Notes under the pieces: generated by a model
Told to the model about the DNA's origin: nothing
Database searches by the model: none
What the model saw: only the letters and a program-made list of their open reading frames with translations
Shown here: positions 2,257 through 61,209 of the stretch, piece by piece
Position numbering within the stretch: the stretch's first letter is position 1
How the letters are laid out: each line of letters starts with the position of its first letter
Source: Dendrobates tinctorius
Taxonomy: Eukaryota
DNA: 64,000 nucleotides
NCBI RefSeq assembly: GCF_039654945.1
Contig: NW_027361834.1
Span: forward strand, 1,426,001 to 1,490,000
Direction: 5' to 3'
Made by a program: the position numbers and the translations under genes

Positions 2257-3034
2257 GGAGAGAGATTGTGGGCCCCTTTAGGATCCCTGAAGGGGTAAAG
2301 ATGAACTCCATAATCTATGTGGAGTTTCTAAAACAGCACTTCCTGCCATGGTTCAAGAGGAAGAACTGTGCTTTCCGCAGCAAGATCATTTTCATGCATG
2401 ATAATGCACCGTCTCAGGCTGCAAATAACACATCTGTATCTCTGGCTGCTATGGGCATAAAAGAGGACAAACTTATGGTGTGGCCACCATCTTCCCCTGA
2501 CCTCAACCCCATTGAGAACCTCTGGAGCATCATCAAAAGGAGTGTCTATGATGGCGGGAGGCAGTTCACATCTAAGCAACAGCTCTGGGAGGGTATTCTG
2601 TCCACATGCAAAACAATTGAAGCACAACTCATCCAAAAACTGACAAATTCAATGGACGAGAGAGTTCAGAAGCTTCTTTCGAACAAGGGGTCCTATGTGC
2701 AAATGTAACATCACCTAGAATAAAGTTTTGACTTGAAAACTGTTTGATTTCATTTTGTAATAAGCTGATAATGCTTATAATATCACAATTCACCATTTTT
2801 TTGTTCAAAATAAAAATAAAAAGGTTGAAAACTCTGCTGTGCATAATTTGGAACATGCATTTTGAGTGTTTATCATTTTTAAAAATATACTGTTTTCATA
2901 GGCAGTTTGTTCCAAAACATTGCAATTATACTAGAATATTAGATGACTGGAAAATAACAATGACTGCAATTCATATAGGTAATTTAGAGAAAATATGAGG
3001 AAATATTTTTGGCATAATAATTTGGAACACAGTG
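2257..3034 (+). mobile_element. 3' half of a Tc1-like DD37E (TRT-type) transposon; transposase C-terminus ends at 2708
   Basis: FMHDNAPS...[15 protein letters not shown] with 37 residues between D and E; right end ...TTTGGAACACAGTG followed by TA; inner repeat GCATAATTTGGAAC at 2841. Confidence 0.9.
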
Positions 3035-4790: not shown

Positions 4791-5796
4791 TGTAATATAC
4801 GGTATATATTTAATTTTTGCTCATATCACGAGAAAATGTAAATTAAAAAAAAGGAACGATAAGTCTATTTTTCACAAGACCATAAAGGGGCCATTAATTA
4901 TATTTTAAATTCTGTTGCTCTTTCCGTAATTTTTTTTTATATATATCAGACTTAAAGGGATTGTCCACTACTTGTTAGGAGCGGCGGAACGCACTAAATA
5001 AAAATGATAATAAAGTGTGTTCGCCGCTCGGGGTCCACCGTGCAGTAGGTGTTACAACCGCTGCAGAGTGATGGCAGGAGCAATATGGCGGTATAATGCA
5101 CACGGGTTCAACTTCACCCATAGTGCGCCGAGCGGGCTCTGTTCACACACAGAGATGCCGCAACACAAAAACACAAAGAACACTGAATCTGTTAGTGTCA
5201 TAGAGTTCAGTTGAAATGCACACACGGTATCTGGTCACAGGAGCAGAGCCAAAGACAGCAGAACTGCATCCGTCTAGACCTACCGTGTGTGCGGCGTCGC
5301 TACTGCGGGCGACAAGGGGGGCTACAACTGCAGCGCGGCATAGGACACTGCCGCTCAACAACAAGGCTGGAAGGCAAGCACGATGTCGGACGCTAGCGTA
5401 GCGGTGCGGTGAGCACAGTGGCTTAAGGGTATGTGCACATGGTGCAGATTCTGCAGCTGCGGGTCCGCAGCAGATTCTCCTGCGTTGTACAGTACCTTTA
5501 TTTCCTATGGAAATGTAAAAATCCTCTGCACATGCTGCGGATTTTTCCGCGCGGTTCTGCTGCAGTTTACAATCCGCAGCATGTCAATTCTTTGTGCGGT
5601 TCTGCTGCGTTTCTGGACCCATTGACTTCCATTGAGTCCTGCAATTCTGCAGCAAAACCGCAGAGATAAAAATATCTGCGGTTATTGCTGCGGAATTGGG
5701 TGAAAAAACGCAGCAGAAGGAAGTGATGTAGGGAGGAAGAGGAAGTGCGGGGGCGGAGTGTAGTGTAGGGAAGAAGAAGGAAGTCGCCATAACGTC

Positions 5797-8700
5797 ATGG
5801 AAGGATACCGTCGCATGGGGATCGATGTGGGCTGTCTCATTGATTTGGTATGTATGCATGTATGTATGTGTGTGCGTCAGTATGTTTGTGTCTGTCTGTG
5901 TGCTTCAGTCTGTGTGCGTCAGTCCCCATGCGACGGTAAGCCCACAACTGTGCTGTATGGGACTGCTGCTACCATCCGGCTATAGGATGGGAGAGTACTC
6001 CCTGCGACGACCGTGCACAATTGTTCAGTTTTAAATGGTTAAAAAAAAAACATACATGACACATACAATACACATAGAACACATGTAACATACAATAAAG
6101 GACATACAACATACAGCATTAAATACATACCCATCACATAGCGGTGCTCCTGCCCTTTTTCGCGGAGTTTACCGGTGTTCGGCCGCTCCGAGACCTCGCT
6201 TTACGGCACTGTAGCTGCGTGTGACCTTTCCCACACAGCAGTGCCGTAAAGGAGAGTACCGGAGTCAATGAACTCCGGTAAACTCTCTCGCGCATGCGCA
6301 GTAACACACTGCAGGAGCTTAGCTCCTGTCAGTGTGTTTCTGCAGCCATGGACGATGGTCACATCTTAGGATGTGACTGTTCTCCATGGCAGATCGTCGT
6401 GAGACCCTCGTTTATGGACTGCGTCGGACCAGGGAGTATGAATTTGGTTTTTTTTTTCCTTTTTTCTAGGTGAACGAGGGCGTTGCAAAGGATTGAGTGT
6501 ATAATAATATTTTTTGTCAAAAACTTCTGTCTTTTTATTTCATTAAATGTTTTTTTTTTGGTGTCTGTGTTTTATTTCCAATATTACTGTTTTGGATTAA
6601 TAATGGATCGGCGTCTTCTTGACGCCTCTCCATTATTAACCGGGCTTAATGTCACCGATCAAAGGTGACATTAACCCCTTTATTACCCCACATCCCACCA
6701 CTGCGTGGGAGTGGGAAGAGAGAGGCTAAGTGCCGGAATTGGCGCATCTTATAGATGCGCCATTTCTGGGGCGGCTGTGGGCTGATATTTGTAGCCGGGG
6801 GGGGGGCCAAAATCCATGGCCCCTTCCTAGGCTATGAATATCAGCTCGCAGCTGTCTGCATAGCCTTTCTGGCCCTAAAATAAATTTTTTTTTTTGGTGG
6901 TACCCCTATTTTTAGAGCCAGAAAGGCTACGCAGACAGCTGTGGGCTGATATTCATAGCAAGGCTGCAAAGTTAACCCTCAGCTGTCTGCTTAGCCTTTC
7001 TGGCCCTAAAATGTAGGGGAACCCCACGTACATTTTTTTGGGGGTCCCACCATTTTTTAGAGCCAGAAAGGCTGTGCATACACTACAGCCTGGGTACATA
7101 TGGTCTACATTAACCCCTCCCAGCCAACACGTAACCCATGACGTATTTTGGATTCTGTTTGGGATATTGATTATGGTAGGGATTGTACTAAGTGTAGGGA
7201 TTAGTGTAGGGATTATACTAAGTGTAGGGATTATGGTAGGGATTAGTGTAGGGATTGTACTAAATGTAGGGATTAGTGTAGGGATTATGGTAGGGATTAG
7301 TGTAGAGATTGTACTAAGTGTAGGGATTATGGTAGGGATTAGTGTAGGGATTATGGCAGGGATTGTACTAAGTGTAGTGATTAGTGTAGTGATTACGGTA
7401 GGGATTAGTGTAGGGATTAGTGTAGGGATTGTACTAAGTGTAGAGAATAGTGAAGGGATTAGGGTAGGGATTAGGGTAGGGATTGTACTAAGTGTAGGGA
7501 TTAGTGTAGGGATTACTGTAGGGATTGTACTAAGTGTAGGGATTAGTGTAGGGATTATGGTAGGGATTAGTGTAAGGATTATGGTAGGGATTGTACTAAG
7601 TGTAGTGATTAGTGTAGTGATTATGTTAGGGATTAGTGTAGGGATTAGTGTAGGGATTGTACTAAGTGTAGAGAATAGTGAAGGGATTAGTGTAGGGTTT
7701 AGGGTAAGGATTAGGGTAGGGATTGTACTAAGTGTAGGGATTAGTGTAGGGATTGTACTAAGTCTAGGGATTAGTGTAGGGATTATGGTAGGGATTAGGG
7801 TAGGGATTGTACTAAGTGTAGGGATTAGTGTAGGGATTATGGTAGGGATTAGGGTAGGGATTGTACTAAGTGTAGTGATTAGTGTAGGGATTATGGTAGG
7901 GAATAGTGTAGGGATTAGTGTAGGGATTGTACTAAGTGTAGAGAATAGTGAAGGGATTAGTGTAGGGATTAGGGTAGGGATTGCACTAAGTGTAGGGATT
8001 AGTGTAGGGATTAGGGTAAGGATTAGGGTAGGGATTGTACTAAAGGGCATGTCACACTAAGCGATATCGCTAGCAATATCGCTATAACTTGTGACGTTAT
8101 AGCGATATTGCTAGCGATATCGCTGTGTCTGATACTTACCTCCGACCCACTCCCCCGCTGATTATCGCTGATCGCGCGAGAACGTCCAGGACCGTTTCTC
8201 GTCGTCAGCTTCCTGCGGCGCTTCCTGCTGTGACGACGAGCGACGCATGGAGCCGGGCGGGAGGACGCAGGATCGCCTGGTGTGACAGGTAAGTAGCGAC
8301 CCCCGTCCACAGCGATGTCGCTGGTGAGATCTGCCTGTGTGGCAGCTCACTAGCGACCACTTAGCGATGTACCAGCGATCCTGACCGCGTCATATTGCTG
8401 GTCGGGATCGCTGGTACATCGCTAAGTGTGACAGTACCTTAAATGTAGGAATTAGTGTAGGGATTGTACTAAGTGTAGGGATTAGTGTAGGGATTATGGT
8501 AGGGATTATGGCAGGGATTAGGGTAGGGATTGTACTAAGTGTAGGGATTAGTGTAGGGATTGTACTAAGTGTAGGGATTAGTGTAGGGATTGTACTAAGT
8601 GTAGGGATTATGGTAGGGATTAGGGTAGGGATTGTACTAAGTGTAGGGATTAGTGTAGGGATTAGTGTAGGGATTGTACTAAGTGTAGGGATTAGTGTAG

Positions 8701-11700
8701 GGATTATGGTAGGGATTAGTGTAGGGATTATGGCAGGGATTAGTGTAGGGATTGTACTAAGTGTAGGGATTAGTGTAGGGATTATGATAGGGATTAGGGT
8801 AGGGATTGTACTAAGTGTAGGGATTAGTGTAGGGATTAGTGTAGGGATTATGGTAGGGATTGTACTAAGTGTAGGGATTGTACTAAGTGTAGGGATTCCT
8901 GTAGGGATTATGGTAGGGATTAGTGTAGGGATTATGGTAGGGATTAGTGTAGGGATTGTACTAAGTGTAGGGATTAGTGTAGGGATTAGTGTAGGGATTA
9001 TGGTAGGGATTGTACTAAGTGTAGGGATTAGTGTAGGTATTAGTGTAGGGAATATGGTAGGGATTGTACTAAGTGTAAGGATTAGTGTAGGGATTAGTGT
9101 AGGAATTAGTGTAGGGATTATCGTAGGGATTGTACTAAGTGTAGGGATTAGTGTAGGGATTATGGTAGGGATTAGGGTAGGGATTGTACTAAGTGTAGGG
9201 ATTAGTGTAGGGATTGTACTAAGTGTAGGGATTCCTGTAGGGATTATGGTAGGGATTAGTGTAGGGATTATGGTAGGGATTAGTGTAGGGATTGTACTAA
9301 GTGTAGGGATTAGTGTAGGGATTATGGTAGGGATTAGTGTAGGGATTATGGCAGGGATTAGGTTAGGGATTGTACTAAGTGTAGGGATTAGTGTAGGGAT
9401 TGTACTAAGTGTAGGGATTAGTGTAGGGATTATGATAGGGATTGTACTAAGTGTAGGGATTAGTGTAGGGATTATGGTAGGGATTAGGGTAGGGATTGTA
9501 CTAAGTGTAGGGATTAGTGTAGGGATTAGTGTAGGGATTATGGTAGGGATTGTACTAAGTGTAGGGATTGTACTAAGTGTAGGGATTCCTGTAGGGATTA
9601 TGGTAGGGATTAGTGTAGGGATTATGGTAGGGATTAGTGTAGGGATTGTACTAAGTGTAGGGATTAGTGTAGGGATTAGTGTAGGGATTATGGTAGGGAT
9701 TGTACTAAGTGTAGGGATTAGTGTAGGTATTAGTGTAGGGAATATGGTAGGGATTGTACTAAGTGTAAGGATTAGTGTAGGGATTAGTGTAGGAATTAGT
9801 GTAGGGATTATCGTAGGGATTGTACTAAGTGTAGGGATTAGTGTAGGGATTATGGTAGGGATTAGGGTAGGGATTGTACTAAGTGTAGGGATTAGTGTAG
9901 GGATTGTACTAAGTGTAGGGATTCCTGTAGGGATTATGGTAGGGATTAGTGTAGGGATTATGGTAGGGATTAGTGTAGGGATTGTACTAAGTGTAGGGAT
10001 TAGTGTAGGGATTAGTGTAGGGATTATGGTAGGGATTGTACTAAGTGTAGGGATTGTACTAAGTGTAGGGATTCCTGTAGGGATTATGGTAGGGATTAGT
10101 GTAGGGATTATGGTAGGGATTAGTGTAGGGATTGTACTAAGTGTAGGGATTAGTGTAGGGATTATGGTAGGGATTGTACTAAGTGTAGGGATTAGTGTAG
10201 GTATTAGTGTAGGGAATATGGTAGGGATTGTACTAAGTGTAAGGATTAGTGTAGGGATTAGTGTAGGAATTAGTGTAGGGATTATCGTAGGGATTGTACT
10301 AAGTGTAGGGATTAGTGTAGGGATTATGGTAGGGATTAGTGTAGGGATTAGTGTAGGGATTGTACTAAGTGTAGGGAATAGTGTAGGGATTAGTGTAGGG
10401 ATTATGGTAAGGGAAGAGATTAGGGTAAAGGTTAGGGATAGTGATTCGGGTAAAGGGAAGGGGTAGGGTTAGGGTTATTTATTTTTTGGGTTTTTAGTTT
10501 TTGAGGGTTAACATAGTATCTAATGATGCAAATCTCTACATTGTAGGTCCGTGATTTTCCACCCATATGGGACCCTTCTGACGAGGCCTACAAGGACCGC
10601 TATTACCGCGATCACTGCTGGACGAAAGTGTTACGCCAGCTGTATCCTGACTGGGATTCTTGTAACAATACAACACAGTTGCAAATTGGTAATTAGAATA
10701 TTCTTTTTACACTCCAAAAATTGGTGTACCTAAATATTATAATTAATGATTTGTAGCTTTTTTTCTTTTAGAAAAAGATGTAAAGCAGCGATGGAGATCC
10801 GTGAAAGACAGATTCCATAAATATGTGGCAAGCTGCAATAAAAGTGGATCCTCTATCACCCGACACTCCTTCCCTTTTTATGAGGAACTGCAATTTTTGG
10901 TAACTGGCAGGACATTGCGTAGGTAAATAATTTTTATTTCTAAAAAGTATTTTAAAGCTATCTATCCTCTATTTGTAGGTTGTATAACACAATCGGCAAT
11001 TGTATTCAACTCTGCATACAACTGCACCGTTATTTTAATTTGTTGTGCCCACATAGAACAGGATAGTAGAGGAGATGTGATGAATTTCCCTCTCCACTAT
11101 GTGTACAAACAGTGGAGGTTGTAGCGCTGTTCCCGTACAGGTGACACGTGTTTTGTCCCCACTGCATGGCACTTGTCTTGCGTTTGCACTCTGTCTCTGC
11201 AAGATAAGTATTGATATTATGCATTTTTTATCTCAAACAGCACTCAAGGCAACACTGACCCTCCGGCAGAGGAAGATTCAGAAGAGGCATCTGGACCTTC
11301 AACTGGAGCTGCTGTGAACTGTTCTTCAGCTGGTGAAGTTGGTTCTGGTGGTGCCCCATTGTCATCAGATGCTGGGGCATCGTCGTCCGCTGCTGCTGAA
11401 AAATCTGTAGTAGTGGAAACAGTTGGTAGAGGAAGGGCTGGCGGTCCGGTGTCAGGAGAGCCCAACCAAAAAAAAAAAAAAAAACAAGGATAAAACAATA
11501 AAAGCGGCAAATGAGTCGCTAGCCTTGATTAAGAAGTCAACCACGGAAGACGAATTCGACTTTTTCGCTTTACAAGGCTCGCTCCCTGCCACCGGATCGC
11601 CAGAACATTTTCACAAGCCTGGTCCAGATGTCGCTTACAGCGTTACATGATCCCACACCTATTTTGCCATATGATGACATTTTGATGTCGGTTTTGGGAC

Positions 11701-11858
11701 TATTCCGAAAAAAAAACCAAGGCCAAACACCAATTCAACAATATCAAGCCAGTCGCCCATACACTAGTGAGCTGCTTGGACCACCAACAAATCATACTTA
11801 CAATCAGGATGCATCATCAAACTATGGGTACTACCCACAGTACCAGAATTTAAACTAA
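5797..11858 (+). CDS. Harbinger MADF/Myb-SANT-like DNA-binding protein, join(5797-5847,10547-10688,10772-10922,11241-11858); last exon frameshifted (stop at 11491-11493 as written, 198 aa)
   Basis: GT-AG introns with matching phases give IDVGCLIDL|VRDFPPIWDPSDEAYKDRYYRDHCWTKV...|EKDVKQRWRSVKDRF...KSGS...FYEELQFL..R|STQGN, the tryptophan pattern typical of MADF; AATAAA at 11861. Confidence 0.8.
6832..7075. repeat. Two adjacent hairpins in the MADF gene intron 1
   Basis: CTATGAATATCAGC...TAGCCTTTCTGGC pairs with GCCAGAAAGGCTA...GCTGATATTCATAG (6832-6958); a related arm pair at about 6990-7075. Confidence 0.7.
7170..10475 (+). repeat. G-rich minisatellite of 12- and 18-bp units (GGGATTAGTGTA, GGGATTATGGTA, GGGATTGTACTAAGTGTA)
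   Basis: Read directly; rare variants recur at a 690-bp period (8891/9581 and 9031/9721). Confidence 0.97.
8044..8439. mobile_element. Harbinger-type MITE inserted in the minisatellite
   Basis: TIR AGG...TGTCACACT(A/T)AGCGAT; TAA TSD; removing it restores the unit GTACTAAATGTAGG. Confidence 0.85.
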
Positions 11859-12280
11859 ATAATAAAGTTTGTGGTTGACCTTTTTGTTGTTGGCCCAAAA
11901 TGTTTGTGGCCATATGTTATCTTTCAAATTGAAAAATCAGTTACAATGTTTGTCATAAAGTTTACTGTTTTTCAAATAAATTTTTATTGATACATTTACT
12001 TTGTGTTCTTTCTCATAATTAAAGGGGGCTACACTACGGCTACATAAGGCCAGTGTCATGGGAACATCATGACAACACTATTGGGTAGAGTCAAAGAATG
12101 GTTATGGTGTAAGTTAATGGGACTATGGGACCTAGATTACAACAAACGTTTCCTTATCCATAGTGGGGGTCGGGTGGTCCTGCTGGTGCCCATAGAAACT
12201 ATGTTGTTATCAATCCAAAAAAAGAAAAAAAAAGACGGGTCCTTCTTTGCTGCCGCTCAATCTTCTTCTTCTCTGATCTT

Positions 12281-14620
12281 TCACTGCTGTTCAGGCTTCC
12301 CATCACCAGCACAGGAGTATTGCCAGTGCACGGCACCTTCTGGACTCATAAAATAGTCAGTAAAGGTTTCTCTCACACGCACACCCGAGTTGGATGCTCT
12401 TCCCACATGGCGCGCTGGATTACATTGTGGCTGCTGGTACTCCACATCTACCTCGGAGCTGTACTCACGAGCGTAGTTGTGGAGTACACAGCATGCTTTA
12501 ATCACGGCGTCAATGGTGTCTGGATCCAACTGGATGGCAGTGTGAAAGATCCTCCACTGACTAGTCATGATCCCAAAGGTGCATTCCACATATCTTCGTG
12601 CACGACTCAGCCGATAATTAAAAATCCTCCGCTGGGCATTCAGTCCCCTTCGTGGGTATGGGCGCAGCAGGGTGGTCATTAATGGAAAGGCCTCATCCGA
12701 TACCATCACAAAGGGCACTGGATGTGTGGAACCCGGCAAAGATCTTGGGGCTGGGAGTGTTCCGCCATCTCGAAGAATTTGCTGTCCAACATGTGATGTT
12801 CGCAACACCCGAGAATCCCCAGTACTGCCATAAGCACCAACGTCGATGGCAACAAATTTGTAATGGGCATCAGCCACCGCCATCAGGACCACCGAAAAAT
12901 ACTTCTTATAATTAAAGAAGCGTGATCCTGATCGTGGTGGCTTCTGCACTCTTACATGTTTACCATCAACTGCACCTATGCAGTCTGGGAAACTGGCCAC
13001 AGACTGAAAGCCTGCTGCAACCTGCAGCCAAGTCTCCTCGGTCGGGGAAGGCATCACCATGGGCTGCAACTTCTGCCAGATGACGTCACATGTGCACCTC
13101 ACAATTTGAGAGATGGTGGATTTACCAACTCTAAATTGGAGGTGTAGGGATGTATAGCTCTCTCCTGTGGCCAAATACCTGAAAAGAAAAAAAAAAATTA
13201 GAAAAGTCACACAAAAATGTCCTGTAACCTGTCAGCATGTATGGCCGCTATAGATGCCTAAACCGCCTTTCATGTCTTCTATGAAGTATTCTATGTTGTC
13301 GCTAACAACACGGTGTAAAAATAAAGCTGGAAAGAAACACAGTGACATGTACATAGACCCATTAATTAGAGTGTGTCTACCTGTGTCAGTGTCTCCGTTA
13401 CATGTTCAAAATTTAATAACCCGTGCCCGATACACTGATGTGTGAAAGGAGCGTAATGACATTCAAACCGAAAATTAGTTACTTACCGCAAGGTGATGAG
13501 CAGCCTTTCCTCAGCAGTGATGGCCATCCTCATGACCGTATCAGCAAATGTAATATGAGGACCCAAGATTTCAAGCAGATGATCAAAGGCGGTGATTGCA
13601 AGCCGGCAGAAGGACACAAACTTGTCCGGATATCTGGAAAGTAAACAAAAAAAAATGGTTAGTTAATGATTATAGACATTTTACATTGTAAAATTGCTTG
13701 CCATATTTGGCAACTTACCTCCTCAAATCATTATAAAGAACGTTAAAATGCCCTTTGTGGGTTCTGTCCACTAAGAGTGGGTGCACCCAAAATTTACGCC
13801 CTTGCTTTCTCCTTCTGCGCTGAGCCTGAAATAAAAATATACTTTTAGTACACAGCACACTCAAAAAACAAAGACATGTGAACAATTTTATGATTCATAA
13901 CCCTAATCCCCAAAATAGTCTTAATCAAAAACATATTCTAAAATCTGATTTCCCAAAAAACACCAATCCGAAATCTATTCATAATCCAAACAATAATAAC
14001 AAACCTAACCAAACCACAACCATTATCCAAAACCCAACCATAACCCTAATCCCATACGCAATCCATAATCCCATACCCAATCCAAAATCTATTAATAATC
14101 AAAACAATAATCAATAACCTAACCCAATCACAACCCTCCAAAACCCAACCATAACCTAATCCCATACGCAATCCATAATCCCATACCCAATTCAAAGTCT
14201 ATTAATAAACAAAACAATAATCAATAACCTAACCCAATCACAACCCTCCAAAACCCAACCATAACCTAATCCCATACCCGATCCATAATACCATACCCAA
14301 TCCCAAGTCTATATTATCCAAACACTAATCAATAACCTAACCCAATCACAAGCCTAATCCAAATGCAAACCAACCCTATTCCCAACAAACCCCAATCCTC
14401 TCTATTATCTAATCCCAAACATAATCACGGTCCTTATCCAAAAAAATAGCAACCCTAACGTTATCAAACCCAAATCTATTACCTGCTCTCTGTGCTGCAT
14501 CAGGATTTGCAGCAAACACCTCAGCATGAGGATTTTGAAGGGCCTGCGGACCGTTTGGCGCTGCACGCTGTAATCTTCATCCTGCTGGGCACTCTGCTGC
14601 TCATTTCTGTCACTCATCAT
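12281..14620 (-). CDS. PIF/Harbinger DDE transposase (HARBI1-like family), join(14620-14483,13825-13719,13633-13487,13178-12281), 429 aa, uninterrupted
   Basis: 138+107+147+898=1290 nt; GT-AG introns in phases 0,2,2; motifs FWVHP, EERLLITLRYLATG, IGAVDGKH, FNYKKYFS, VSDEAFPL, FNYRLSRARRYVECTFG. Confidence 0.93.
13890..14470 (-). repeat. Degenerate CCTAATCCC-type repeat with a 110-bp unit (about 3 copies) in transposase intron 1
   Basis: AACCCAACCATAAC recurs at 14031, 14142 and 14252. Confidence 0.8.
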
Positions 14621-16575
14621 TCTTTTTTTGCTAAAAGCAAAATGGAGGCTGGGGGCTTGGAGCAGGAAATGACATCACCTTTTTTTTTCCTTGAGTATAG
14701 TTTGTCAAACTTTATTTATATTCTTCTTTGAGAAAACCGCAGACAATTCTGCAAAAAAAAAACGCAGTAAAAACCGCAGCAAAACCGCACTTGCGGTTTC
14801 TGCCAAGAGGTGCGGTTTTTGCAAAACCAAAAACGCAGAAAAAATTCCTATGTGTGCACATAGCCTAAGGCTTGCCACTGACAGGCAATGACTACTAAAC
14901 TAATTCCCTATCACCATGCGTAATATCAGAGGGAAGGGGTTTCAAATGAGTCAGTCACCAGAGTCATACATCCGTCACCATTCACACATAGCAGTATAGT
15001 CTATACTAGCACATGGCGGAACGGCCATGCGCGCTTTTTATAGCTGTGCGGGACCTTCCAGATCTCCGAGATGGACCAATGAGATCTGGAACAGGACCTG
15101 GGCACATGACTCCCGATCTCCAATGGGAGATCGTCCCGTGAGCATGCCCAGTAGGAGCACAGAGGGACTTAGTCTCTGGAGCGGTCTGCTGCAAAGTAAT
15201 CTCCTCTGTAGTAGAAAGACAGCAGGAGACCGCAGAATGTGAGGCTCTAGATTCCTGCAGAGCAGACGCAGAAACCTGACGCCTAACACTACTAGGACAA
15301 CCTCTTCTCGATCTGAATGTTTGACGCCGATAAAATAAAAGCACTTACACTCCCCTCCCGTGCCAGTGCCGTTCCAGCAGTGTCTGCACTCGTGGTCCCG
15401 GGGCACTCGTGCGGTTGTTAGAACACATGAGCCTGGCACCCAATCAGCACTGGTGTCACTGTTTCTGCCTTCGGACAAATCGAACATCAAGAGGAAGTCA
15501 GAGATCAGCTGCAGCCCTGACTTCCTGTTGATGTTCAATTCTTCTGAAGGCGGGAACAGTGACGCCAGCGCTGATTGGGCGCAAGGGTCATAACAAACGC
15601 ACGAGAGTCCCAAAACCTTGAGCGCCGTCAAACCTGAAACAACGTCGACACAAGAGGTGAAGATAGGTGTTTTTATTTTATTTAATTTTCCTAGTAGTGG
15701 ACTACCCCTTTAAGGATTTTTTTTTTGCCTGGAGAGCAATTCAGACATTGGGTTTCTTTTTTTAAACTATTCATTTTTTTCTTGCTTCTTCTCGCTTTTG
15801 CTCTTTTTATTTATTTTACACATTATGCCTTTAGAGGCATTTCAACATATAAATACATTTAATTTCTTAATTCTCCTGTATAAGCGACGGGAATATCAGC
15901 CACATTTATAAAGCAAATTCAGCCCCCTGCCTGCACTTCAGAAACATAAAGCAACCAATGTCCCTGCAAAGTATTCATGGAAAGGGCAAATGGATGAAGC
16001 CTAGTACTGTAACACAGCGCTGTCTGTGCATGGAACAATAAGCCTGTGAGCAGCAGATGGGATGGAGGGCTGTACATGAGAATGGATGGGGAGCGCAGCC
16101 CTAGAGGTTTAGAGTCTGTACCTTTTTTGTCTCAAATCTCATACAGGGGCACACAGGTTACCTTTGTGCAATTCTGTACGAATCCAACACAAATAAATTA
16201 TTGTATGATACATTAGAATGATGTTGTATTATAAAAGGTATTCTCCCGTAATAGCAATGCTTCCAGAGAAAATCGAAGTGAATTTGGCCAGCAGGTTACT
16301 TATTCTGAAGCATTGCTTCTAGGTAAAAATATCTCCACAATACAGTGCTCTACGTAGGCACCAAGCAAGGGCACCTGAAGCTCCAAGCGCTACGAACAGA
16401 GCAAACGGAACCATACACCCACACATAATATTTTACTCCCTGGCCCTAAGAGTCCCTTCTTAATAAATGTTAATCATGAAAAGAATATGCCCAGAGACCA
16501 CAACGTTCTCCTAATGTCACCTAATGTCTACTAAAACATGGTCTTTCAGATACACCAAATGGACATTTACATATA

Positions 16576-29700: not shown

Positions 29701-31750
29701 TTTGCTGTAACTGTGATAACGCCGTGTTACTTGTGCAGTGAAAATACCCAGCGCTAAAAACTCATCATCCTAAATTCAGAATATATATTCAACTCAATTC
29801 AAAGGAGTCGTACGCTTCCATGCGAAGCAAAACAGGCCCTGGAGACCATTTTTCCCCCTTTAGTTTACCTCTTCTTTAGATAGTTTCCAGTCATCATTCA
29901 GATCCATTTCTTGGAATGACTCATGGGACCTCGGACCATTTCGGATATCCATCAGGCTAATGTTGAAGATTAATGTACTGTCTGGGGAAATTTTTCCTAG
30001 AACAAAAAACCTTATTCAGAGAAGACATGAAAAATGCTACTGCGCTAACAGATTAGTAAAAACGGCACAGTCATGCAAATATAGAAAACCTGGCCATAAA
30101 TCCAGCTTTTGCCAAGAATGCAGGCCCCCAACCCTCCTCCAAAGGGTCAGCTGTTCGGGGACGTGGAAAGACATGCCTTCCCTGAGCTCTCGCAGCACTC
30201 AACCTGGACGGACCATTTAGGGGCAGATTTTACGGTAGCATCGTGAAAACGATGGGAAGTGTGTAACTCTGCTGACATTTTGTGAAAGCCTGTGGCCCGC
30301 CGCAGTCTCAGACTGCCGAACACCCCCACCTCCCAGACCCCGTAGCATCGCCAAAATTGTGCTGATGTAAAGTAGACATGTGGGAAATATTATTTATTAA
30401 CTATTTTTTGTCACATAAACTCTCTGGTTTAACAGAATAAAAATTCAATTTTTTTTGACAAATAAACGCAACAATTAGGCTGGGTTCACACGAAGCGGAA
30501 CTCTCGTGGAAATTACCGCGAGAATTCCGGAATTCCATGGGAAAATCGCATTTTAAATTCCCGCGATTTTCCCGCGGAAAAACTAGCATTTTGCAAACGT
30601 AATTAGCTTGCAGAATTGCTAGCGTTTTCCAAGCGATCTGGAGCATCGCTTGGAGAACTGATTGACAGGTTGGTCACACTCGTCAAACAGTGTTTGATGA
30701 GTGTGACCAACTTTTACTATTGAGGCCGCCTATGCGGCATCAGTAGTAAAAGATAGAATGTAAAAAATAAAAAAAATATTGTTATTCTCACCTTCCGATG
30801 TCCCGCGCAGCCTTCCCGCCTCTCTCCACGCTCCCGATCCCAGTAATCCTTTGCGACAATTACCGCGATGATGTCTGTTCTCGCGGGATCGCGACGCCTC
30901 GCGGTCATTCGCGATGACGTCGCGCGAATGACCGCGAGACTTCGCGATCCCGCGAGAACGGACGTCATCGCTCGCAAAGGCTTACTGGGACCGGGAGCGT
31001 GGAGAGAGGCGGGAAGACTGCGCGGGACATCGGAAGGTGAGAATAACAATATTTTTTATTTTAAATTCTATTTTTTACAGGGATATGGTGCCCAAAGCCC
31101 GGAGGACAGTCTCCTCTCCTCCGGACAGTGGGTACCATCTGCAAATGTTCTGCTTACATTTCGCATGGTGGGCACAGTCACATGCGGGAAGTAAGCGGAA
31201 CAATGCATTCCTATGGGTGCGGGATCGCCGCGATTCCGCGAAATTAATGAGCATGCTGCGGTTTTACCGCAAAGCAATTCCGCCGCAGTAAAAACCGCAG
31301 CATTAGCACAGCATTGCGGAATCCCATAGGAATGCATGGGATGCTTATTTTTCGCGGTTAAAACCGCCGTGGAAACGCAAAAAAAACGCCACGTGTGAAC
31401 TCAGCCTTATCGACCTAAATATACCACTAACATGAAGCCCAATATGTCCCGAAAAAACACCTCTCAGAATCGCTAGGATCCGTTGAAGCGTTCCTGAGCT
31501 ATTACCTCATAAAGGGACACTGGTCAGAATTGCAAAAAATGGCCAGGTCATTAAGGTCAAAATAGGCTGGGTCATGAAGGGGTTAAAAAACATACATCCT
31601 TAAGAAAATTTCCGTGAAACCATATTAAAAGGAATAGGCCATCAGAAAGATCTGAAAAGGACATTCAAATCAGATTTTGTGCTAAATTAAAAAAATAAAT
31701 AAAAATACCATAAAGTGAGAAATCTTCCAATTGTCATGTTGGCCACTGAG

Positions 31751-56529: not shown

Positions 56530-59500
56530 CTAAATCATCCCAGTCAGATGTCTGTCCAGCCTCTGTTTGAAGACATCCATTGAAGGAGAACTCACCACTT
56601 CTCGTGGCAGCTTGTTCCACTCATTGATCACTCTAACTGTCAAAAAGTTTTTTCTAATATCTAATCTGTGTCTCCTCCCATTCAGTTTCATCCCATTGCT
56701 TCTAGTCTTTCCTTGTGCAAATGAGAAAAAAGTTGATCCTTCTACAATGTGACAGCCCTTTAGATATTTGTAGACAGCTATTAAGTCTCCTCTCAGTCTT
56801 CTCTTTTGCAAACTAAACAATCCCAAATCCTGCAACCTTTCCTCATAAGACAGGGTTTGCAGACCGGTCACCATTCTGGTTGCTCTTTTCTGAACTTGCT
56901 CCAGTTTGTTGATGTCTTTTTTAAAATGTGGTGCCCAAAACTGGACACAATATTCCAGATGAGGTCTGACCAAAGAGGAGTAGAGAGAAATAATGACTTC
57001 ACGTGATCTAGACTGTATGCTTCTGTGAATACATCCTAGAATTGCCTTTGCTTTTTTTGCTGCTGCATCACACTGTTGACTCATATTCAGTCTGTGATCT
57101 ATTAGTATACCCAAGTCTTTTTCACATGTGCTGTTGCTTAGGCCTATTCCTCCCATTCTGTATATGCTTTTTTCATTTTTATTTCCCAGATGTAGTACTT
57201 TGCATTTTTCCCTGTTAAAAAGCATTCTGTTAGTTGCTGCCCACTTCTCCAGTTTATTTATATCTTTTTGAATCCTCTCTCTCCTCTAGTATTAGCTATC
57301 CCTCCTAGCTTCGTGTCATCAGCAAATTTAATGAGTTTACCCTCAATTCCTTCATCTAAATCGTTGATAAAGATGTTGAACAATACAGGGCCCAGGACAG
57401 AGCCCTGTGGTACCCCACTTGAGACATTCTTCCAACTGGATGTGCAGCCATTTACGACCACTCTTTGGGTCCGATCACTAAGCCAGTTATGAATCCACCT
57501 AACAGTTGCCTTGTCCATTCCATACTTAGTCATTTTTTCAATAAGGATTGTATGAGATACTTTGTCAAATGCTTTTCTGAAGTCAAGATATACTATATCT
57601 ACAGCATTTCCTTGATCCACCCAATCAGTGATTCCGTCATAGAAGGAAATTAAGTTAGTCTGACATGACTTACTAGTTACAAACCCATGCTGGCTCTGTT
57701 TAATCACTTCATTCTTATCCAGGTACTGACATACATGTTGTTTAATAATTTGTTCAAAGATCTTTCCTGGTATAGCAGTCAGACTCACCGGCCTATAGTT
57801 GCCTGGGTCCACCTTCTTCCCCTTTTTGAAGATAGGAACAACATTTGCTCTTCTCCAGTCTTCTGGGACTTCTCCTGTTCTCCAAGAATTTTCAAAGATT
57901 ATGGAGAGGGGTTCAAAAATTTCTTCTGCTATCTCCTTCAGTACTCTGGGGTGTAATTCATCTGGACCTGGAGACTTGAATTCATTTAGGTTAGCTAAGT
58001 GTTTCCTCACTATCTTTCTGTTTATAGATATCCTGGATTCTTCTATTCCCTTAATAGGACAGTGAAGAACAGTTGATGTCACATTTCCTTTCTGAGAGAA
58101 AACAGATGCAAAATGGGAATTTAAAAGTTCGGCCTTCTCAACATCCTGTCTTACCATTTCATCATTTTCATCCTGTAAAAATCCTATAGCATCCTTGACT
58201 TTTCTTTTACTTTTGACATATCCCCAAAATCCTTTATTATTGCTTTTGACATCTCTTGCAAGCCTCAATTCATTGTCAGCTTTAGCTAATCTGATTTGTG
58301 CCCTGCAGGTTCTGCAGACAGCATTGCGACGGGGTCCATTGGTCCCCGTCGCAACCACCAGCAAGTGAAACTGACGTGGTCATGTGTTGACTCACATCAC
58401 GAAGGTCCTGTATACCTGGAGCAGCTCACAGACGCCGGGAGCACGAGAGGCCGCTCACGTCTGCTCCACAGCTGGAGGTACACTGACAGGAGGCTGCCAC
58501 CGGCCTGGGCAGGCCCTGTAACTCGTCTATACCCCAGTGTACAAACCCCCCCCCTCCTTTTCCAAGCGTTGGAGCAAAAAGCGCTATTTTAACTTGCACC
58601 GCTTACTGGAGTAAGGACTTTGCATCGCATTATCTTTACAGGTACCGCTCTCTGACTTGTGCATTTACTATTGCGGCTACTCTGCACAGCCGTTCACAGG
58701 CTGCAATTTGACTTTGACTTTTTTTTTTAAGCTACTATCAGGGAGAATTACCCTGCAGTCTATAACCTGTTCAGTGATTTCAGGCTTTTACCCTCACTCA
58801 TGCCTTTTTAGTTTGTGATTGTTCAGGTTGGAACTAAGATTGCCACCAGCATCTATATATATTCTTTTTCCCTTAAGCACTTCTGAGGTCTTACAATTGA
58901 CTATTACTAATTGCTATTTTCTCGCTATTATCCAGCTACATAAAGAGCACTTAAGAGGTTTTTTTTTTTTCTTCTATAACCACCCAATTTAGATTTCCCT
59001 CTTCTTTGAGTGTTCCAAGCGCACACTAATATTAGTTATTTTACCTTATTTCTTTGACACCCTTGTGACAGGTGTCTTAGTGTTTGCTGCTGGAATTACA
59101 CTCGTACACAAGCGCCACTGAAACTCCATTAGCATTATATTCTTCTTTAGATATGCCTCCCTCTTTCCATTTTATAAACATTTTTTTCTTCCATTTTAGC
59201 ATGTGCTTAAGTTCTGTGTTCATCCATCCTGGTTTCCTTAAATGCTTCCTATTCTTCCCACTTTTCGGAATTGTTAACAATTGTGCTTTGAGAATTTCAT
59301 TTTTCAAGATTTCCCATCCTTCCTGGACATTTTTGTCTTTAAGGATATCCAGCCATTGGATCCCTCCAATTCTCTTTCTGAATCCCTTAAAATCTGCCTT
59401 TCTGAAATCTAACCTTGACGTCTGAGTCTTCACAGGTCTTCCTCCTCTAGTTATCCAAAATTCTAAAATAGCATGGTCGCTACCTCCTAGGGTCCCAGCC

Positions 59501-60110
59501 ACTTTTACCTCCTCAACCATTTCCTCCCTGTTTATAATGATTAGATCCAAGGTAGAAGTTCCCCTTGTTTTGTCCCCTACCTTTTGGAAGATAAAGTTGT
59601 CAGCAAGAGAGGATAAGAATTTCCTTGACCTGTTAGTTTTGCCTGAGAGAGATTCCCAACAAATGTCTGGATAGTTGAAATCTCCCATGACAACTATGTC
59701 ATATTTTTTGGAGAACTTGGCCATTTGATGCATAAAGAGTTCATCCATATCTTCAGCTTGCACAGGCGGACTGTAGTAAATGCCTACAATGGTGTCCTTT
59801 CCATTGTTCTGTCCTTGTATTCTTACCCAAACAGTTTCCACAGAACTCCCAGTCTCTGAAGCTTCAATCTCTGTGCAGATATACGCGTTTCTAACATACA
59901 ATGTGACACCCCCTCCTCGTTTATCAAGTCTGTTTCTTGCAAATAAGTTGTATCCTTCTAGCCTTGTATTCCAATCATATGTATCGTCCCACCAAGTTTC
60001 AGTGATTCCAATGACATCATATTTCTTTTCCTGTGTTAGTAGTTCCAATTCTCCTTGTTTGTTGCCCATGCTTTGTGCATTAGTATAGAAACATTTTAGT
60101 TTGTGATTGG
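56530..60110 (-). pseudogene. CR1 ORF2 (endonuclease + reverse transcriptase), split by an 805-bp insert and frameshifted near 57280
   Basis: GITETWW, MGDFNYPDI, GSDH; [23 protein letters not shown]. Confidence 0.93.
58326..59130. mobile_element. Unclassified 805-bp insertion with 6-bp TSD
   Basis: AGCATT at 58320-58325 and 59131-59136; removal restores [12 protein letters not shown]. Confidence 0.85.
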
Positions 60111-60248
60111 TTTCTCTTTCTCCAATATTTTTATTAATTAGATTCTTTTGTCTTTGTTCTTCCTTTCCACTTTCAATAGCAGAGTTCTCAATAGCATTTG
60201 TCAGGTGTATGGCTTTTTCTGGTCTTTTGCTTCCCTTCCCATGTTGTT

Positions 60249-61209
60249 CTAGTTTAAAGCTCTCCTTACAAGTGTAGCAAGACGACTTCCAAATACATGC
60301 TTACCAGTCTTCGTAAGGTGCACCCCATCTCTAGCAAGTAGTCCATCGTAAAGGTAACTCACTCCGTGATCCAGAAATCCAAATCGTTGCTGACGGCACC
60401 ATCGACGTAGCCAGTTGTTCACCTGCAGAATCTTATTCCACCTCCTTGTTCCTTGGCCATCCACTGGGAGGATGGAAGAGAAGACCACCTGCGCTCCCAG
60501 TTCTTTCACTTTCTTGCCTAAGTCTTCAAAGTCTCTGCAGATGGTTTCCAGGTCGTTTCTTGCTGTGTCATTTGTCCCCACATGTAGTAGCAGGAATGGG
60601 TAGTCATCTGTAGGTCTGAAGAGTCCTGATATCCTGTCAGACACATCTTTAATTTTTGCACCTGGAAGACAGCACATTTCTCTTGAAGTTATATCTGGTC
60701 TGCAGATAGCAGCCTCTGTTCCTCTCAACAGGGAATCCCCCATGACCACCACTCTCCGTTTCTTCTTCACAACATTTTTCTTTCTCCATCCAGGAGGACT
60801 CTGAAGGCGTACAAGGTTGCTGTTTGTTGGCAAAGTCTTATCCTGATGTATTTCTTCATTGGTTTCCTGCGTGAGAGCCTGGTACTGGTTCCTGAGGAGT
60901 ATGGGAGCTGACTGCCTCCTGATCCTCCTGCTTCTCTGTGTCACACGTTTCCATTTCTCTGCTTCTTCAGGTGCACTTCGAATTTCTTCTTTCTGTAACA
61001 TGAAGAGATAATTCTGCTCTGTCCAAGAACTCTTCACCTTCCTTAATGATCTTCAACGTAGCTAACCTCTCTTCAAGACTTTGCAACTTTTCCTCCAACA
61101 GGGACACAAGCTTGCATTTGTGGCATGTGAAGTTTGGCTTTTCCACTGGTAAGTCTGTGAACATGTAGCAAGAAATGCAGCTCACCAAATGGCTCCTGGC
61201 CTCTTCCAT
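60249..61209 (-). pseudogene. CR1 ORF1 (zinc finger/leucine zipper + SGNH esterase), one frameshift near 60990
   Basis: CxxC-x14-CxxC, heptad leucines, GDS, GTND and DGVH motifs. Confidence 0.9.

What the first reader, a model, noticed from the sequence alone, without database searches (positions are those of the whole stretch)
5427..14865. Complete two-gene Harbinger transposon with an intact spliced transposase and a hidden MADF partner gene
Seen: 13-bp TIRs, a TAA TSD, a stop-free 4-exon 429-aa transposase with the D-D-E motifs (VDGKH, SDEAF, VECTF), and a convergent 4-exon MADF/Myb-like gene whose 51-nt first exon lies 4.7 kb upstream of the second. Known: PIF/Harbinger transposition needs both a DDE nuclease and a Myb/SANT-like protein that binds subterminal motifs. 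Inference: this is a young, near-autonomous vertebrate copy from a family that may still be active, and a candidate for reconstruction as a tool.
Basis: partly seen in the sequence, partly recalled or inferred. Interest (0 to 1): 0.85.

Follow-up and report, generated by a model that had tools for sequence, protein, structure and literature searches.

The report
Harbinger transposon copy, partner gene broken
This is a real 9.4-kb Harbinger "cut-and-paste" jumping gene in a poison-frog genome whose cutting enzyme is still readable but whose DNA-binding partner gene carries two frameshifts, so it is an ordinary decaying copy of a family that is expressed and abundant in these frogs.

Summary
The terminal inverted repeats match at 13 of 14 bases. 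A TAA target duplication flanks both ends. A stop-free 4-exon, 429-aa DDE_Tnp_4 transposase keeps its D-D-E triad. A convergent MADF gene has a 51-nt first exon 4,699 nt upstream of exon 2.

Spliced contigs from RNA-like runs, absent from a DNA run, support four of the six predicted junctions. The other two are supported only by collinearity with annotated frog proteins.

The element is not complete. Its MADF gene tiles the 323-aa Dendrobates tinctorius homologue in three frames. One frameshift lies in an A17 run. A second is a loss of three residues plus two bases inside the conserved C-terminal block. The open frame stops at about 198 aa, after the MADF domain.

The transposase looks plausible but untested. 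It deviates at 3 of 85 strongly conserved columns, including a unique N196D next to the first catalytic Asp.

The best reading is a non-autonomous-by-decay copy that could probably still be moved in trans. A 9-bp motif, AAACCGCAG, is crowded into both ends.

The family itself looks recently successful. Dozens of annotated intact gene pairs exist in Ranitomeya imitator, and many near-identical contigs exist in the host species. The scan has already found many other Harbingers in this genome. I class it as a new member of a known kind, of modest interest.

The parts
5424..5426 (.). Left target-site duplication, TAA
5427..5440 (+). Left terminal inverted repeat GGGTATGTGCACAT
5441..5796 (.). Left subterminal region and presumed MADF-gene promoter. 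It holds six copies of the 9-mer AAACCGCAG (at most 1 mismatch, both orientations) between 5535 and 5713.
5797..5847 (+). MADF gene exon 1 (51 nt, MEGYRRMGIDVGCLIDL), with donor GTATGT
   Evidence: 94% identity to the N-terminus of P0121, and also conserved in P0123 and P0130
5848..10546 (+). MADF intron 1 (4,699 nt). It holds palindromic MITE-like debris (about 6150-7100) and a (T)AGGGATT minisatellite (about 7160-10460).
8044..8439 (.). Nested Tourist-like MITE (396 bp) inside the minisatellite, with its own TAA duplication (8041-8043 and 8440-8442)
10547..10688 (+). MADF exon 2 (MADF_DNA_bdg profile positions 5-41)
   Evidence: junction 10688|10772 seen in spliced contigs of X8 and X15
10772..10922 (+). 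MADF exon 3 (MADF_DNA_bdg profile positions 44-84)
   Evidence: junction 10922|11241 seen in X15, plus a loose end in X8
11241..11858 (+). MADF exon 4, broken. Frame 1 runs to the stop at 11491-11493. The text continues in a second frame (about 11485-11575) and then a third (about 11574-11858, natural stop).
11468..11484 (+). A17 run, the site of frameshift 1. The lysine run is out of register with KDKTIKAANE.
   Evidence: the read tool skipped 11457-11495
11570..11582 (+). Site of frameshift 2. FFALQ abuts KARSL. Three residues (ITS, IAN or VAR in relatives) plus 2 nt are missing.
12281..13178 (-). Transposase exon 4 (DDE_Tnp_4). D202 is at 12965-12967, D292 at 12695-12697 and E329 at 12584-12586.
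13487..13633 (-). Transposase exon 3
   Evidence: junctions 13178|13487 and 13633|13719 seen in spliced contigs
13719..13825 (-). Transposase exon 2 (basic run RRRRKQGRK, then WVHPL)
13826..14482 (-). Transposase intron 1. It holds a GGGATT-type minisatellite in the gene's sense strand (110-bp period, 13963-14355).
14483..14620 (-). Transposase exon 1 (46 aa), collinear with the N-termini of homologues
14621..14851 (.). Right subterminal region and presumed transposase promoter. It holds seven copies of AAACCGCAG (at most 1 mismatch) between 14734 and 14838.
14852..14865 (-). Right terminal inverted repeat (GGCTATGTGCACAC on the minus strand)
14866..14868 (.). Right target-site duplication, TAA

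Best explanation
Window 5427-14865 is one insertion of a PIF/Harbinger DNA transposon in a dendrobatid (poison-frog) genome. The family moves by cut-and-paste. This mechanism is inferred from established knowledge of Harbinger3_DR and rice Ping/Pong. The MADF/Myb-like protein binds short motifs repeated in both subterminal regions; here the candidate is the 9-mer AAACCGCAG. It recruits or imports the DDE transposase, which cuts at the 14-bp TIRs and reinserts at TAA.

In this copy the transposase gene is still open, with its catalytic triad in place. The partner gene is disabled. Two frameshifts in its last exon leave a product of about 198 aa that has the MADF domain but lacks the conserved C-terminal block. 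The copy therefore cannot supply both proteins. It is non-autonomous by decay, but it keeps its ends and could be mobilised in trans by intact relatives.

Shown here: the anatomy, the domains, the breaks, the splicing of family transcripts, and the multi-copy state. Inferred: the binding motif, the need for the C-terminal block, the activity of the transposase, and the age (about 1% from the family majority, so likely millions of years rather than very recent).
For: - TIRs and TSD.
- Gene models.
- Pfam DDE_Tnp_4 at 1.6e-32, and MADF_DNA_bdg on exons 2 and 3.
- DDE residues in invariant columns.
- The transposase deviates at 3 of 85 strongly conserved columns, against a median of 2 among 73 annotated homologues.
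- The MADF pieces tile D. tinctorius XP_073401193.1 (P0121, 323 aa) in three frames.
- The C-terminal block is as conserved (0.78) as the MADF domain (0.75) across eight relatives.
- The same convergent pair is annotated in R. imitator: a 335-aa MADF gene and a 451-aa transposase about 510 bp apart, in 90% clusters of 33 and 43 members.
- Spliced contigs in X8 and X15, with none in DNA run X1, sit at 10688|10772, 10922|11241, 13178|13487 and 13633|13719.
- 13 of 28 near-matches to AAACCGCAG in the 64-kb window fall in the roughly 615 bp of the two end regions.
- DNA run X1 gives 1,217 contigs on the stretch: 187 at 99% or more, 309 at 95-99%, 448 at 90-95% and 273 below 90%.
Against: - Frameshift 1 sits in an A17 homopolymer. 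It could be an assembly error, or be bypassed by slippage, and the reads tool skipped that run.
- Frameshift 2 rests on comparison with proteins of other copies, not on reads of this locus.
- No experiment shows that the C-terminal block is required. A truncated MADF protein might retain DNA binding.
- The 'family majority' mixes subfamilies at 85% likeness or more, and only the best-supported 41 of 558 differences were listed. The ~1% figure and the 7:2 ratio are therefore rough.
- The two exon-1 junctions were not covered by the stretch laid.
Confidence: 0.85

Rival explanations
1. One reading: a complete, near-autonomous, possibly still active copy that supplies both proteins.
For: The transposase is open with its triad intact and is not an outlier at conserved sites. 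The TSD is perfect and the TIRs match at 13 of 14. The family is transcribed and spliced. Frameshift 1 lies in a homopolymer that assemblies often miscall.
Against: The second frameshift lies in non-repetitive sequence, in the middle of the most conserved C-terminal block. The copy has private replacements at conserved positions in both genes. In the transposase these are N196D and P277S. In the MADF gene the window reads C where relatives have R in exon 1, and I where they have P in SSPT.
Confidence: 0.07
2. A domesticated host gene pair, like HARBI1/NAIF1 or the insect PLG/MADF pairs, rather than a transposon.
For: Co-domestication of PIF transposase and MADF pairs is recurrent (PMC9710019). 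The transposase ORF is preserved.
Against: The TIRs and a TAA duplication are intact. Hundreds of contigs at graded identity in a DNA run show many copies. Clusters of tens of members exist in R. imitator at different loci, inside introns of unrelated genes. The partner gene here is frameshifted.
Confidence: 0.02
3. A chimera of two separate insertions, with the MADF half and the transposase half coming from different elements and the matching ends a coincidence.
For: In DNA run X1 the transposase exons have 10-20 times the summed depth of the MADF half. The transposase is 89% identical to R. imitator proteins, but the MADF protein only 44-50%.
Against: The same convergent layout and spacing are annotated in R. 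imitator, 508-510 bp against 422 bp here. There is one pair of matching TIRs with one TAA duplication. The same 9-mer motif sits at both ends. MADF partners are known to evolve fast (PMC9710019).
Confidence: 0.04

Closest known systems
Annotated Harbinger gene pairs of Ranitomeya imitator (451-aa DDE_Tnp_4 protein P0001 with the 335-aa MADF protein P0130/P0123, GCA_032444005.1)
   Same: Convergent two-gene layout and spacing. Transposase 89-90% identical. Same N-terminal MADF peptide (ME[GA]YRRMGIDVGRLIDL). Same conserved C-terminal block.
   Different: Both ORFs are intact there. The MADF protein is only 44-50% identical. The MADF gene spans 3.4-3.7 kb there and 6.1 kb here.
Dendrobates tinctorius XP_073401193.1 (P0121, 323 aa) and P0128
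   Same: These are the closest full-length MADF partners. The window's pieces are 79-96% identical to P0121. The gene also has a long range (6.8 kb), so the long first intron is a family trait.
   Different: P0121 is in one frame throughout. No transposase gene was called within 10 kb of it.
Harbinger3_DR of zebrafish (reconstructed; Sinzelle et al. 2008, as summarised in PMC9710019)
   Same: Two genes, a DDE transposase and a Myb/SANT-like partner. The partner binds a 9-bp motif repeated in the subterminal regions and is needed for nuclear import and transposition. 3-bp TSD.
   Different: The partner here scores as the MADF subtype. Both genes have introns and are convergent. No binding or transposition data exist for the frog family.
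Insect PIF elements with MADF partners and their co-domesticated pairs (PMC9710019)
   Same: DDE_Tnp_4 transposase plus MADF-domain partner. The partner evolves fast.
   Different: This is a vertebrate host and a multi-copy element with TIRs and TSD, not a domesticated pair.
Decaying PIF/Harbinger lineages of Caenorhabditis inopinata (PMC13668399, abstract only)
   Same: A family in which descendant copies differ in which of the two genes they retain.
   Different: A different phylum. Here the transposase, not the MADF gene, is the survivor, whereas other windows of this genome show the opposite.

Membership tests
PIF/Harbinger superfamily (DNA transposon) | DDE_Tnp_4-type transposase with a D-D-E triad | tested here: met
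   Pfam PF13359 at E = 1.6e-32, profile positions 1-158 of 158. D202, D292 and E329 fall in invariant or near-invariant columns.
PIF/Harbinger superfamily (DNA transposon) | 3-bp target-site duplication, typically TAA or TTA | tested here: met
   TAA at 5424-5426 and 14866-14868.
PIF/Harbinger superfamily (DNA transposon) | Short terminal inverted repeats | tested here: met
   13 of 14 bases match. These are the only two matches in the window, against 0.13 expected.
PIF/Harbinger superfamily (DNA transposon) | Second gene encoding a Myb/SANT/MADF-like DNA-binding protein | tested here: met
   MADF_DNA_bdg on exon 2 (1.2e-5) and exon 3 (1.5e-5), both above the cut-off. The full domain is seen in homologue P0121 at 3.8e-13.
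PIF/Harbinger superfamily (DNA transposon) | Repeated short motif in both subterminal regions (partner binding sites) | tested here: met
   13 of 28 near-matches to AAACCGCAG lie in about 615 bp at the two ends. Binding itself was not tested.
Autonomous (self-sufficient) Harbinger copy | Both ORFs intact | tested here: not met
   MADF exon 4 reads in three frames against P0121, with a premature stop at 11491-11493.
Autonomous (self-sufficient) Harbinger copy | Transposase catalytically competent | tested here: inconclusive
   The ORF is open, the triad is present, and there are 3 deviations at 85 conserved columns, including a unique N196D. There is no assay.
Currently active family | Insertion polymorphism or empty sites, or near-identical full-length copies | not testable with these tools
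   Only assembled contigs of runs were available, and DNA of other copies could not be fetched because the files were too large. Indirect signs are 187 contigs at 99% or more and 33-43-member protein clusters in R. imitator.
Currently active family | Transcription with correct splicing | tested here: met
   Four junctions appear in contigs of X8 and X15 and none in DNA run X1. That these runs are RNA is a guess from the record, and the transcripts come from family copies, not necessarily this one.
MADF-BESS proteins | BESS motif (PF02944) C-terminal to the MADF domain | tested here: not met
   There is no BESS hit in P0121, P0123, P0124, P0125 or their C-terminal parts, even at E up to 10. Any resemblance of the 'DFFAL..K.RSLPPDRQ' block to BESS is my recollection only.
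Domesticated HARBI1/NAIF1-like gene pair | Single-copy host locus without TIRs or TSD | tested here: not met
   TIRs and TSD are present, and the element is multi-copy.

The most novel reading that the evidence does not exclude
The family to which this copy belongs may be a naturally active vertebrate Harbinger in dendrobatid frogs, with intact copies elsewhere supplying both proteins. The inverted, telomere-like (T)AGGGATT arrays in the first introns of both genes may be a functional part of the element, for example an ancestral pair of subterminal repeat arrays bound by the MADF protein or used for regulation, rather than passive minisatellites.
Probability: 0.2. Interest if true: 0.55.

Novelty: new member of a known kind. 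Interest (0 to 1): 0.3.

Why it matters
Naturally active Harbinger elements have not been demonstrated in vertebrates. The zebrafish tool Harbinger3_DR was rebuilt from dead copies. A frog family with dozens of intact, expressed gene pairs is therefore a reasonable place to look for one.

This particular copy adds little. It shows the family's full anatomy: the ends, a candidate 9-bp binding motif, both gene structures, and long array-filled first introns. It also shows how copies die, with the fast-evolving partner gene lost first while the transposase frame survives.

It also illustrates a large rate asymmetry within one element lineage. The transposase is 89% identical between the window and R. 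imitator, the MADF partner only 44-50%. That bears on how transposon lineages become mutually incompatible.

Tried and rejected
1. BESS motif in the C-terminal block: no Pfam hit, even at E up to 10.
2. Solved structures: no PDB relative by sequence for the transposase or for P0121.
3. Rfam: no RNA family anywhere in the window.
4. DNA of other copies: four look-ups (R. imitator and D. tinctorius) returned gene tables but no DNA, because the sample files were too large. I therefore could not measure copy-to-copy nucleotide divergence, compare TIRs, or check splice-site conservation at the DNA level.
5. Other copies in the window: tblastn with six homologues found none, and the TIR pattern occurs only at the two ends.
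6. The whole spliced proteins have no reference, so they were not sent to the database tools. Exon pieces were searched apart. The spliced transposase was used only inside scripts.
7. The two exon-1 junctions (5847|10547 and 13826|14482) were not tested with reads. I kept the single read-laying run to 10510-13900 to stay under the size limit and away from the long tandem arrays.
8. Domesticated gene pair and chimera readings: rejected for the reasons given under rival explanations.
The breaks are only described.
Full report
**Observation**

The window contains no N. The element runs from 5427 to 14865, 9,439 bp.

- **Ends.** The ends read GGGTATGTGCACAT and, on the opposite strand, GGCTATGTGCACAC. 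They match at 13 of 14 bases. Similarity stops after position 14. The degenerate TIR pattern occurs nowhere else in 64 kb, against 0.13 matches expected. TAA flanks both ends.
- **Transposase.** Four minus-strand exons join through GT-AG introns of 657, 85 and 308 nt: 14483-14620, 13719-13825, 13487-13633 and 12281-13178. They give a 1,290-nt, 429-aa frame without a stop. Exon 4 matches Pfam DDE_Tnp_4 end to end, E = 1.6e-32. The Asp of VDGKH (D202) and the Asp of SDEAF (D292) sit in invariant columns of an alignment with nine homologues from frogs to insects. The Glu of VECTF (E329) sits in a nearly invariant column.
- **MADF gene.** The plus-strand gene starts 370 bp inside the left end with a 51-nt exon (5797-5847). 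A 4,699-nt intron follows, then exons at 10547-10688 and 10772-10922. These two carry the two halves of MADF_DNA_bdg, profile positions 5-41 and 44-84, each above the gathering score.
- **Exon 1.** Its peptide MEGYRRMGIDVGCLIDL is 94% identical to the N-terminus of a D. tinctorius protein. It recurs as MEAYRRMGIDVGRLIDL in R. imitator proteins that are only about 45% identical overall.

A search of 1.8 billion representative proteins with the last 96 codons of the gene returned a 323-aa protein, P0121. It is D. tinctorius XP_073401193.1. tblastn of P0121 on the window tiles the protein completely, but its last exon falls into three frames:

| P0121 residues | Window coordinates | Frame |
|---|---|---|
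| 112-189 | 11230-11463 | 1 |
| 202-226 | 11504-11575 | 2 |
| 230-323 | 11574-11855 | 3 |

The alignment shows both breaks.

- **Break 1.** It falls inside the lysine run encoded by an A17 homopolymer (11468-11484). The open frame ends five codons later at the TAA at 11491-11493. The product is about 198 aa.
- **Break 2.** It falls between FFALQ and KARSLPPDRQ. All eight relatives have three more residues there (ITS, IAN, VAR or IAR). The window lacks those nine bases plus two more.

The block that follows, about 80 residues from KTIKAANE to GLFR, is as conserved among eight relatives as the MADF domain. Mean majority frequency is 0.78 for the block, 0.75 for the domain and 0.66 for the linker. 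It is therefore very probably functional, and this copy cannot make it. The first break could be a homopolymer assembly error, and the reads tool skipped that run. The second break is in ordinary sequence.

**Transposase state**

Against 73 annotated homologues of 370-480 aa, the window protein deviates at 3 of 85 columns where at least 93% share one residue. The median among homologues is 2, and the window ranks 23rd of 74. It is not visibly degenerate. One of the three deviations, N196D, is unique among the 74 sequences and lies six residues before the first catalytic Asp.

One search listed sites where at least 90% of the depth of DNA run X1 disagrees with the window. At those sites in the transposase CDS, the changes are 7 non-synonymous to 2 synonymous. 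That is what neutral drift after insertion gives, though the listed sites are a selected subset. About 1% of positions in both genes differ from the family majority. I infer an age of millions of years, not a very recent jump. This rests on typical vertebrate neutral rates, which is my knowledge and was not measured here.

**Expression and copy number**

All runs offered were assembled contigs. I laid one DNA run (X1) and three small runs (X5, X8, X15) on 10510-13900 at 85% likeness or more.

- **Junctions.** Contigs of X8 and X15 skip exactly the predicted introns. Junctions 10688|10772 and 13178|13487 appear in both runs, and 13633|13719 in X15. Junction 10922|11241 appears in X15, with a matching loose end in X8. 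None of these joints appears among the 1,217 contigs of the DNA run.
- **Source of the transcripts.** These contigs differ from the window by several letters, so they come from other copies. One carries a 1-nt difference in exon 3 that would shift its own frame.
- **The other two junctions.** The exon-1 junctions lay outside the stretch. They are supported only by collinearity with annotated proteins.
- **Copy number.** X1 contigs split 187/309/448/273 into the bands 99% or more, 95-99%, 90-95% and below 90%. The family is multi-copy with a broad age spectrum. Summed depth over the transposase exons is 10-20 times that over the MADF half.

**Relatives**

- The best transposase hits are all hyloid frogs, led by R. 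imitator (89%, with 90% clusters of 43, 21 and 23 members) and Anomaloglossus (84%). This points to a dendrobatoid host.
- In R. imitator the 451-aa transposase gene is followed 508-510 bp downstream by a convergent 335-aa MADF gene. One such pair sits inside a P450 gene. The two-gene layout is therefore the family's norm, and intact pairs are numerous there.
- The MADF partners are far more diverged than the transposases, 44-50% against 89%. This agrees with the statement that PIF gene 2 evolves fast (PMC9710019).
- MADF gene spans vary: 3.4, 3.7, 4.1, 6.1 (here), 6.8 and more than 9.5 kb. That fits a variable array in intron 1.

**Mechanism**

PIF/Harbinger elements need both proteins. In Harbinger3_DR the Myb-like protein binds a 9-bp subterminal motif and brings the transposase into the nucleus (PMC9710019).

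Here the 9-mer AAACCGCAG (at most 1 mismatch) occurs 6 times within 5535-5713 and 7 times within 14734-14838, in both orientations. That is 13 of the window's 28 matches, in under 1% of its length (k-mer counts). I take this to be the partner's binding motif, which is an inference.

The copy keeps its TIRs, its TSD and these motifs. It should therefore be mobilisable in trans, but it is not self-sufficient.

**Comparison and novelty**

Every defining feature of the superfamily that I could test is met. The feature 'autonomous' is not met. A BESS motif was tested and not found.

Harbingers with MADF partners are known in insects and nematodes. Harbingers and their MITEs are known in Xenopus. 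Earlier notes of this scan list at least eight other Harbinger findings in this same genome, mostly a different family with a 7-exon MADF gene.

This is a new member of a known kind. The finding is sound as annotation and overstated as a discovery.

- Read laying received 3,391 letters.

Noticed in passing
window 7160-10460 (+) and 13880-14480 (complement): Telomere-like (T)AGGGATT minisatellites fill the first intron of both convergent genes, each in its gene's sense strand: about 180 GGGATT on the plus strand on the left, and AATCCC on the plus strand on the right. Because the genes are convergent, this is simply an inverted pair of arrays near the two ends, like the subterminal repeat arrays of other DNA transposons. 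The varying MADF gene spans in relatives suggest the array is a family trait.
   Followed up: partly
window 8044-8439: A 396-bp Tourist-like MITE is inserted in the minisatellite. Its TIRs are AGGGCATGTCACAC and AGGTACTGTCACAC, and it has its own TAA duplication. A second Harbinger-type element therefore jumped into this one.
   Followed up: partly
window ~31150-31407: A MITE-like sequence carries the same AAACCGC(A/G) motifs in both orientations and ends in ...CACGTGTGAACTCAGCC|TTA. It resembles the right end of the main element. It may be a related Tourist-like derivative. Its left end was not defined.
   Followed up: partly
window 10510-13900 (read laying): In DNA run X1 the transposase exons, and also part of intron 3 (13360-13486), have 10-20 times the summed contig depth of the MADF half. 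Either many copies lack this MADF gene, or related families share the transposase at 85% or more.
   Followed up: no
family level (P0001 against P0130/P0123, P0121): Within what appears to be one element lineage, the transposase is 89% identical between this window and R. imitator, but the MADF partner only 44-50%. This means either very fast partner evolution or partner swapping.
   Followed up: partly
window 2268-2705 (+); 56530-61037 (-): There is a Tc1/mariner-type DDE_3 fragment. There is also a LINE with RVT_1, an Exo_endo_phos endonuclease and a GDSL-lipase-like ORF1. The window is TE-rich, and no host gene was recognised.
   Followed up: no
window 5806-5821 and 5923-5938: A perfect 16-nt inverted repeat (TACCGTCGCATGGGGA / TCCCCATGCGACGGTA) has one arm inside MADF exon 1 and the other in intron 1, 101 nt away. 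Its meaning is unknown.
   Followed up: no
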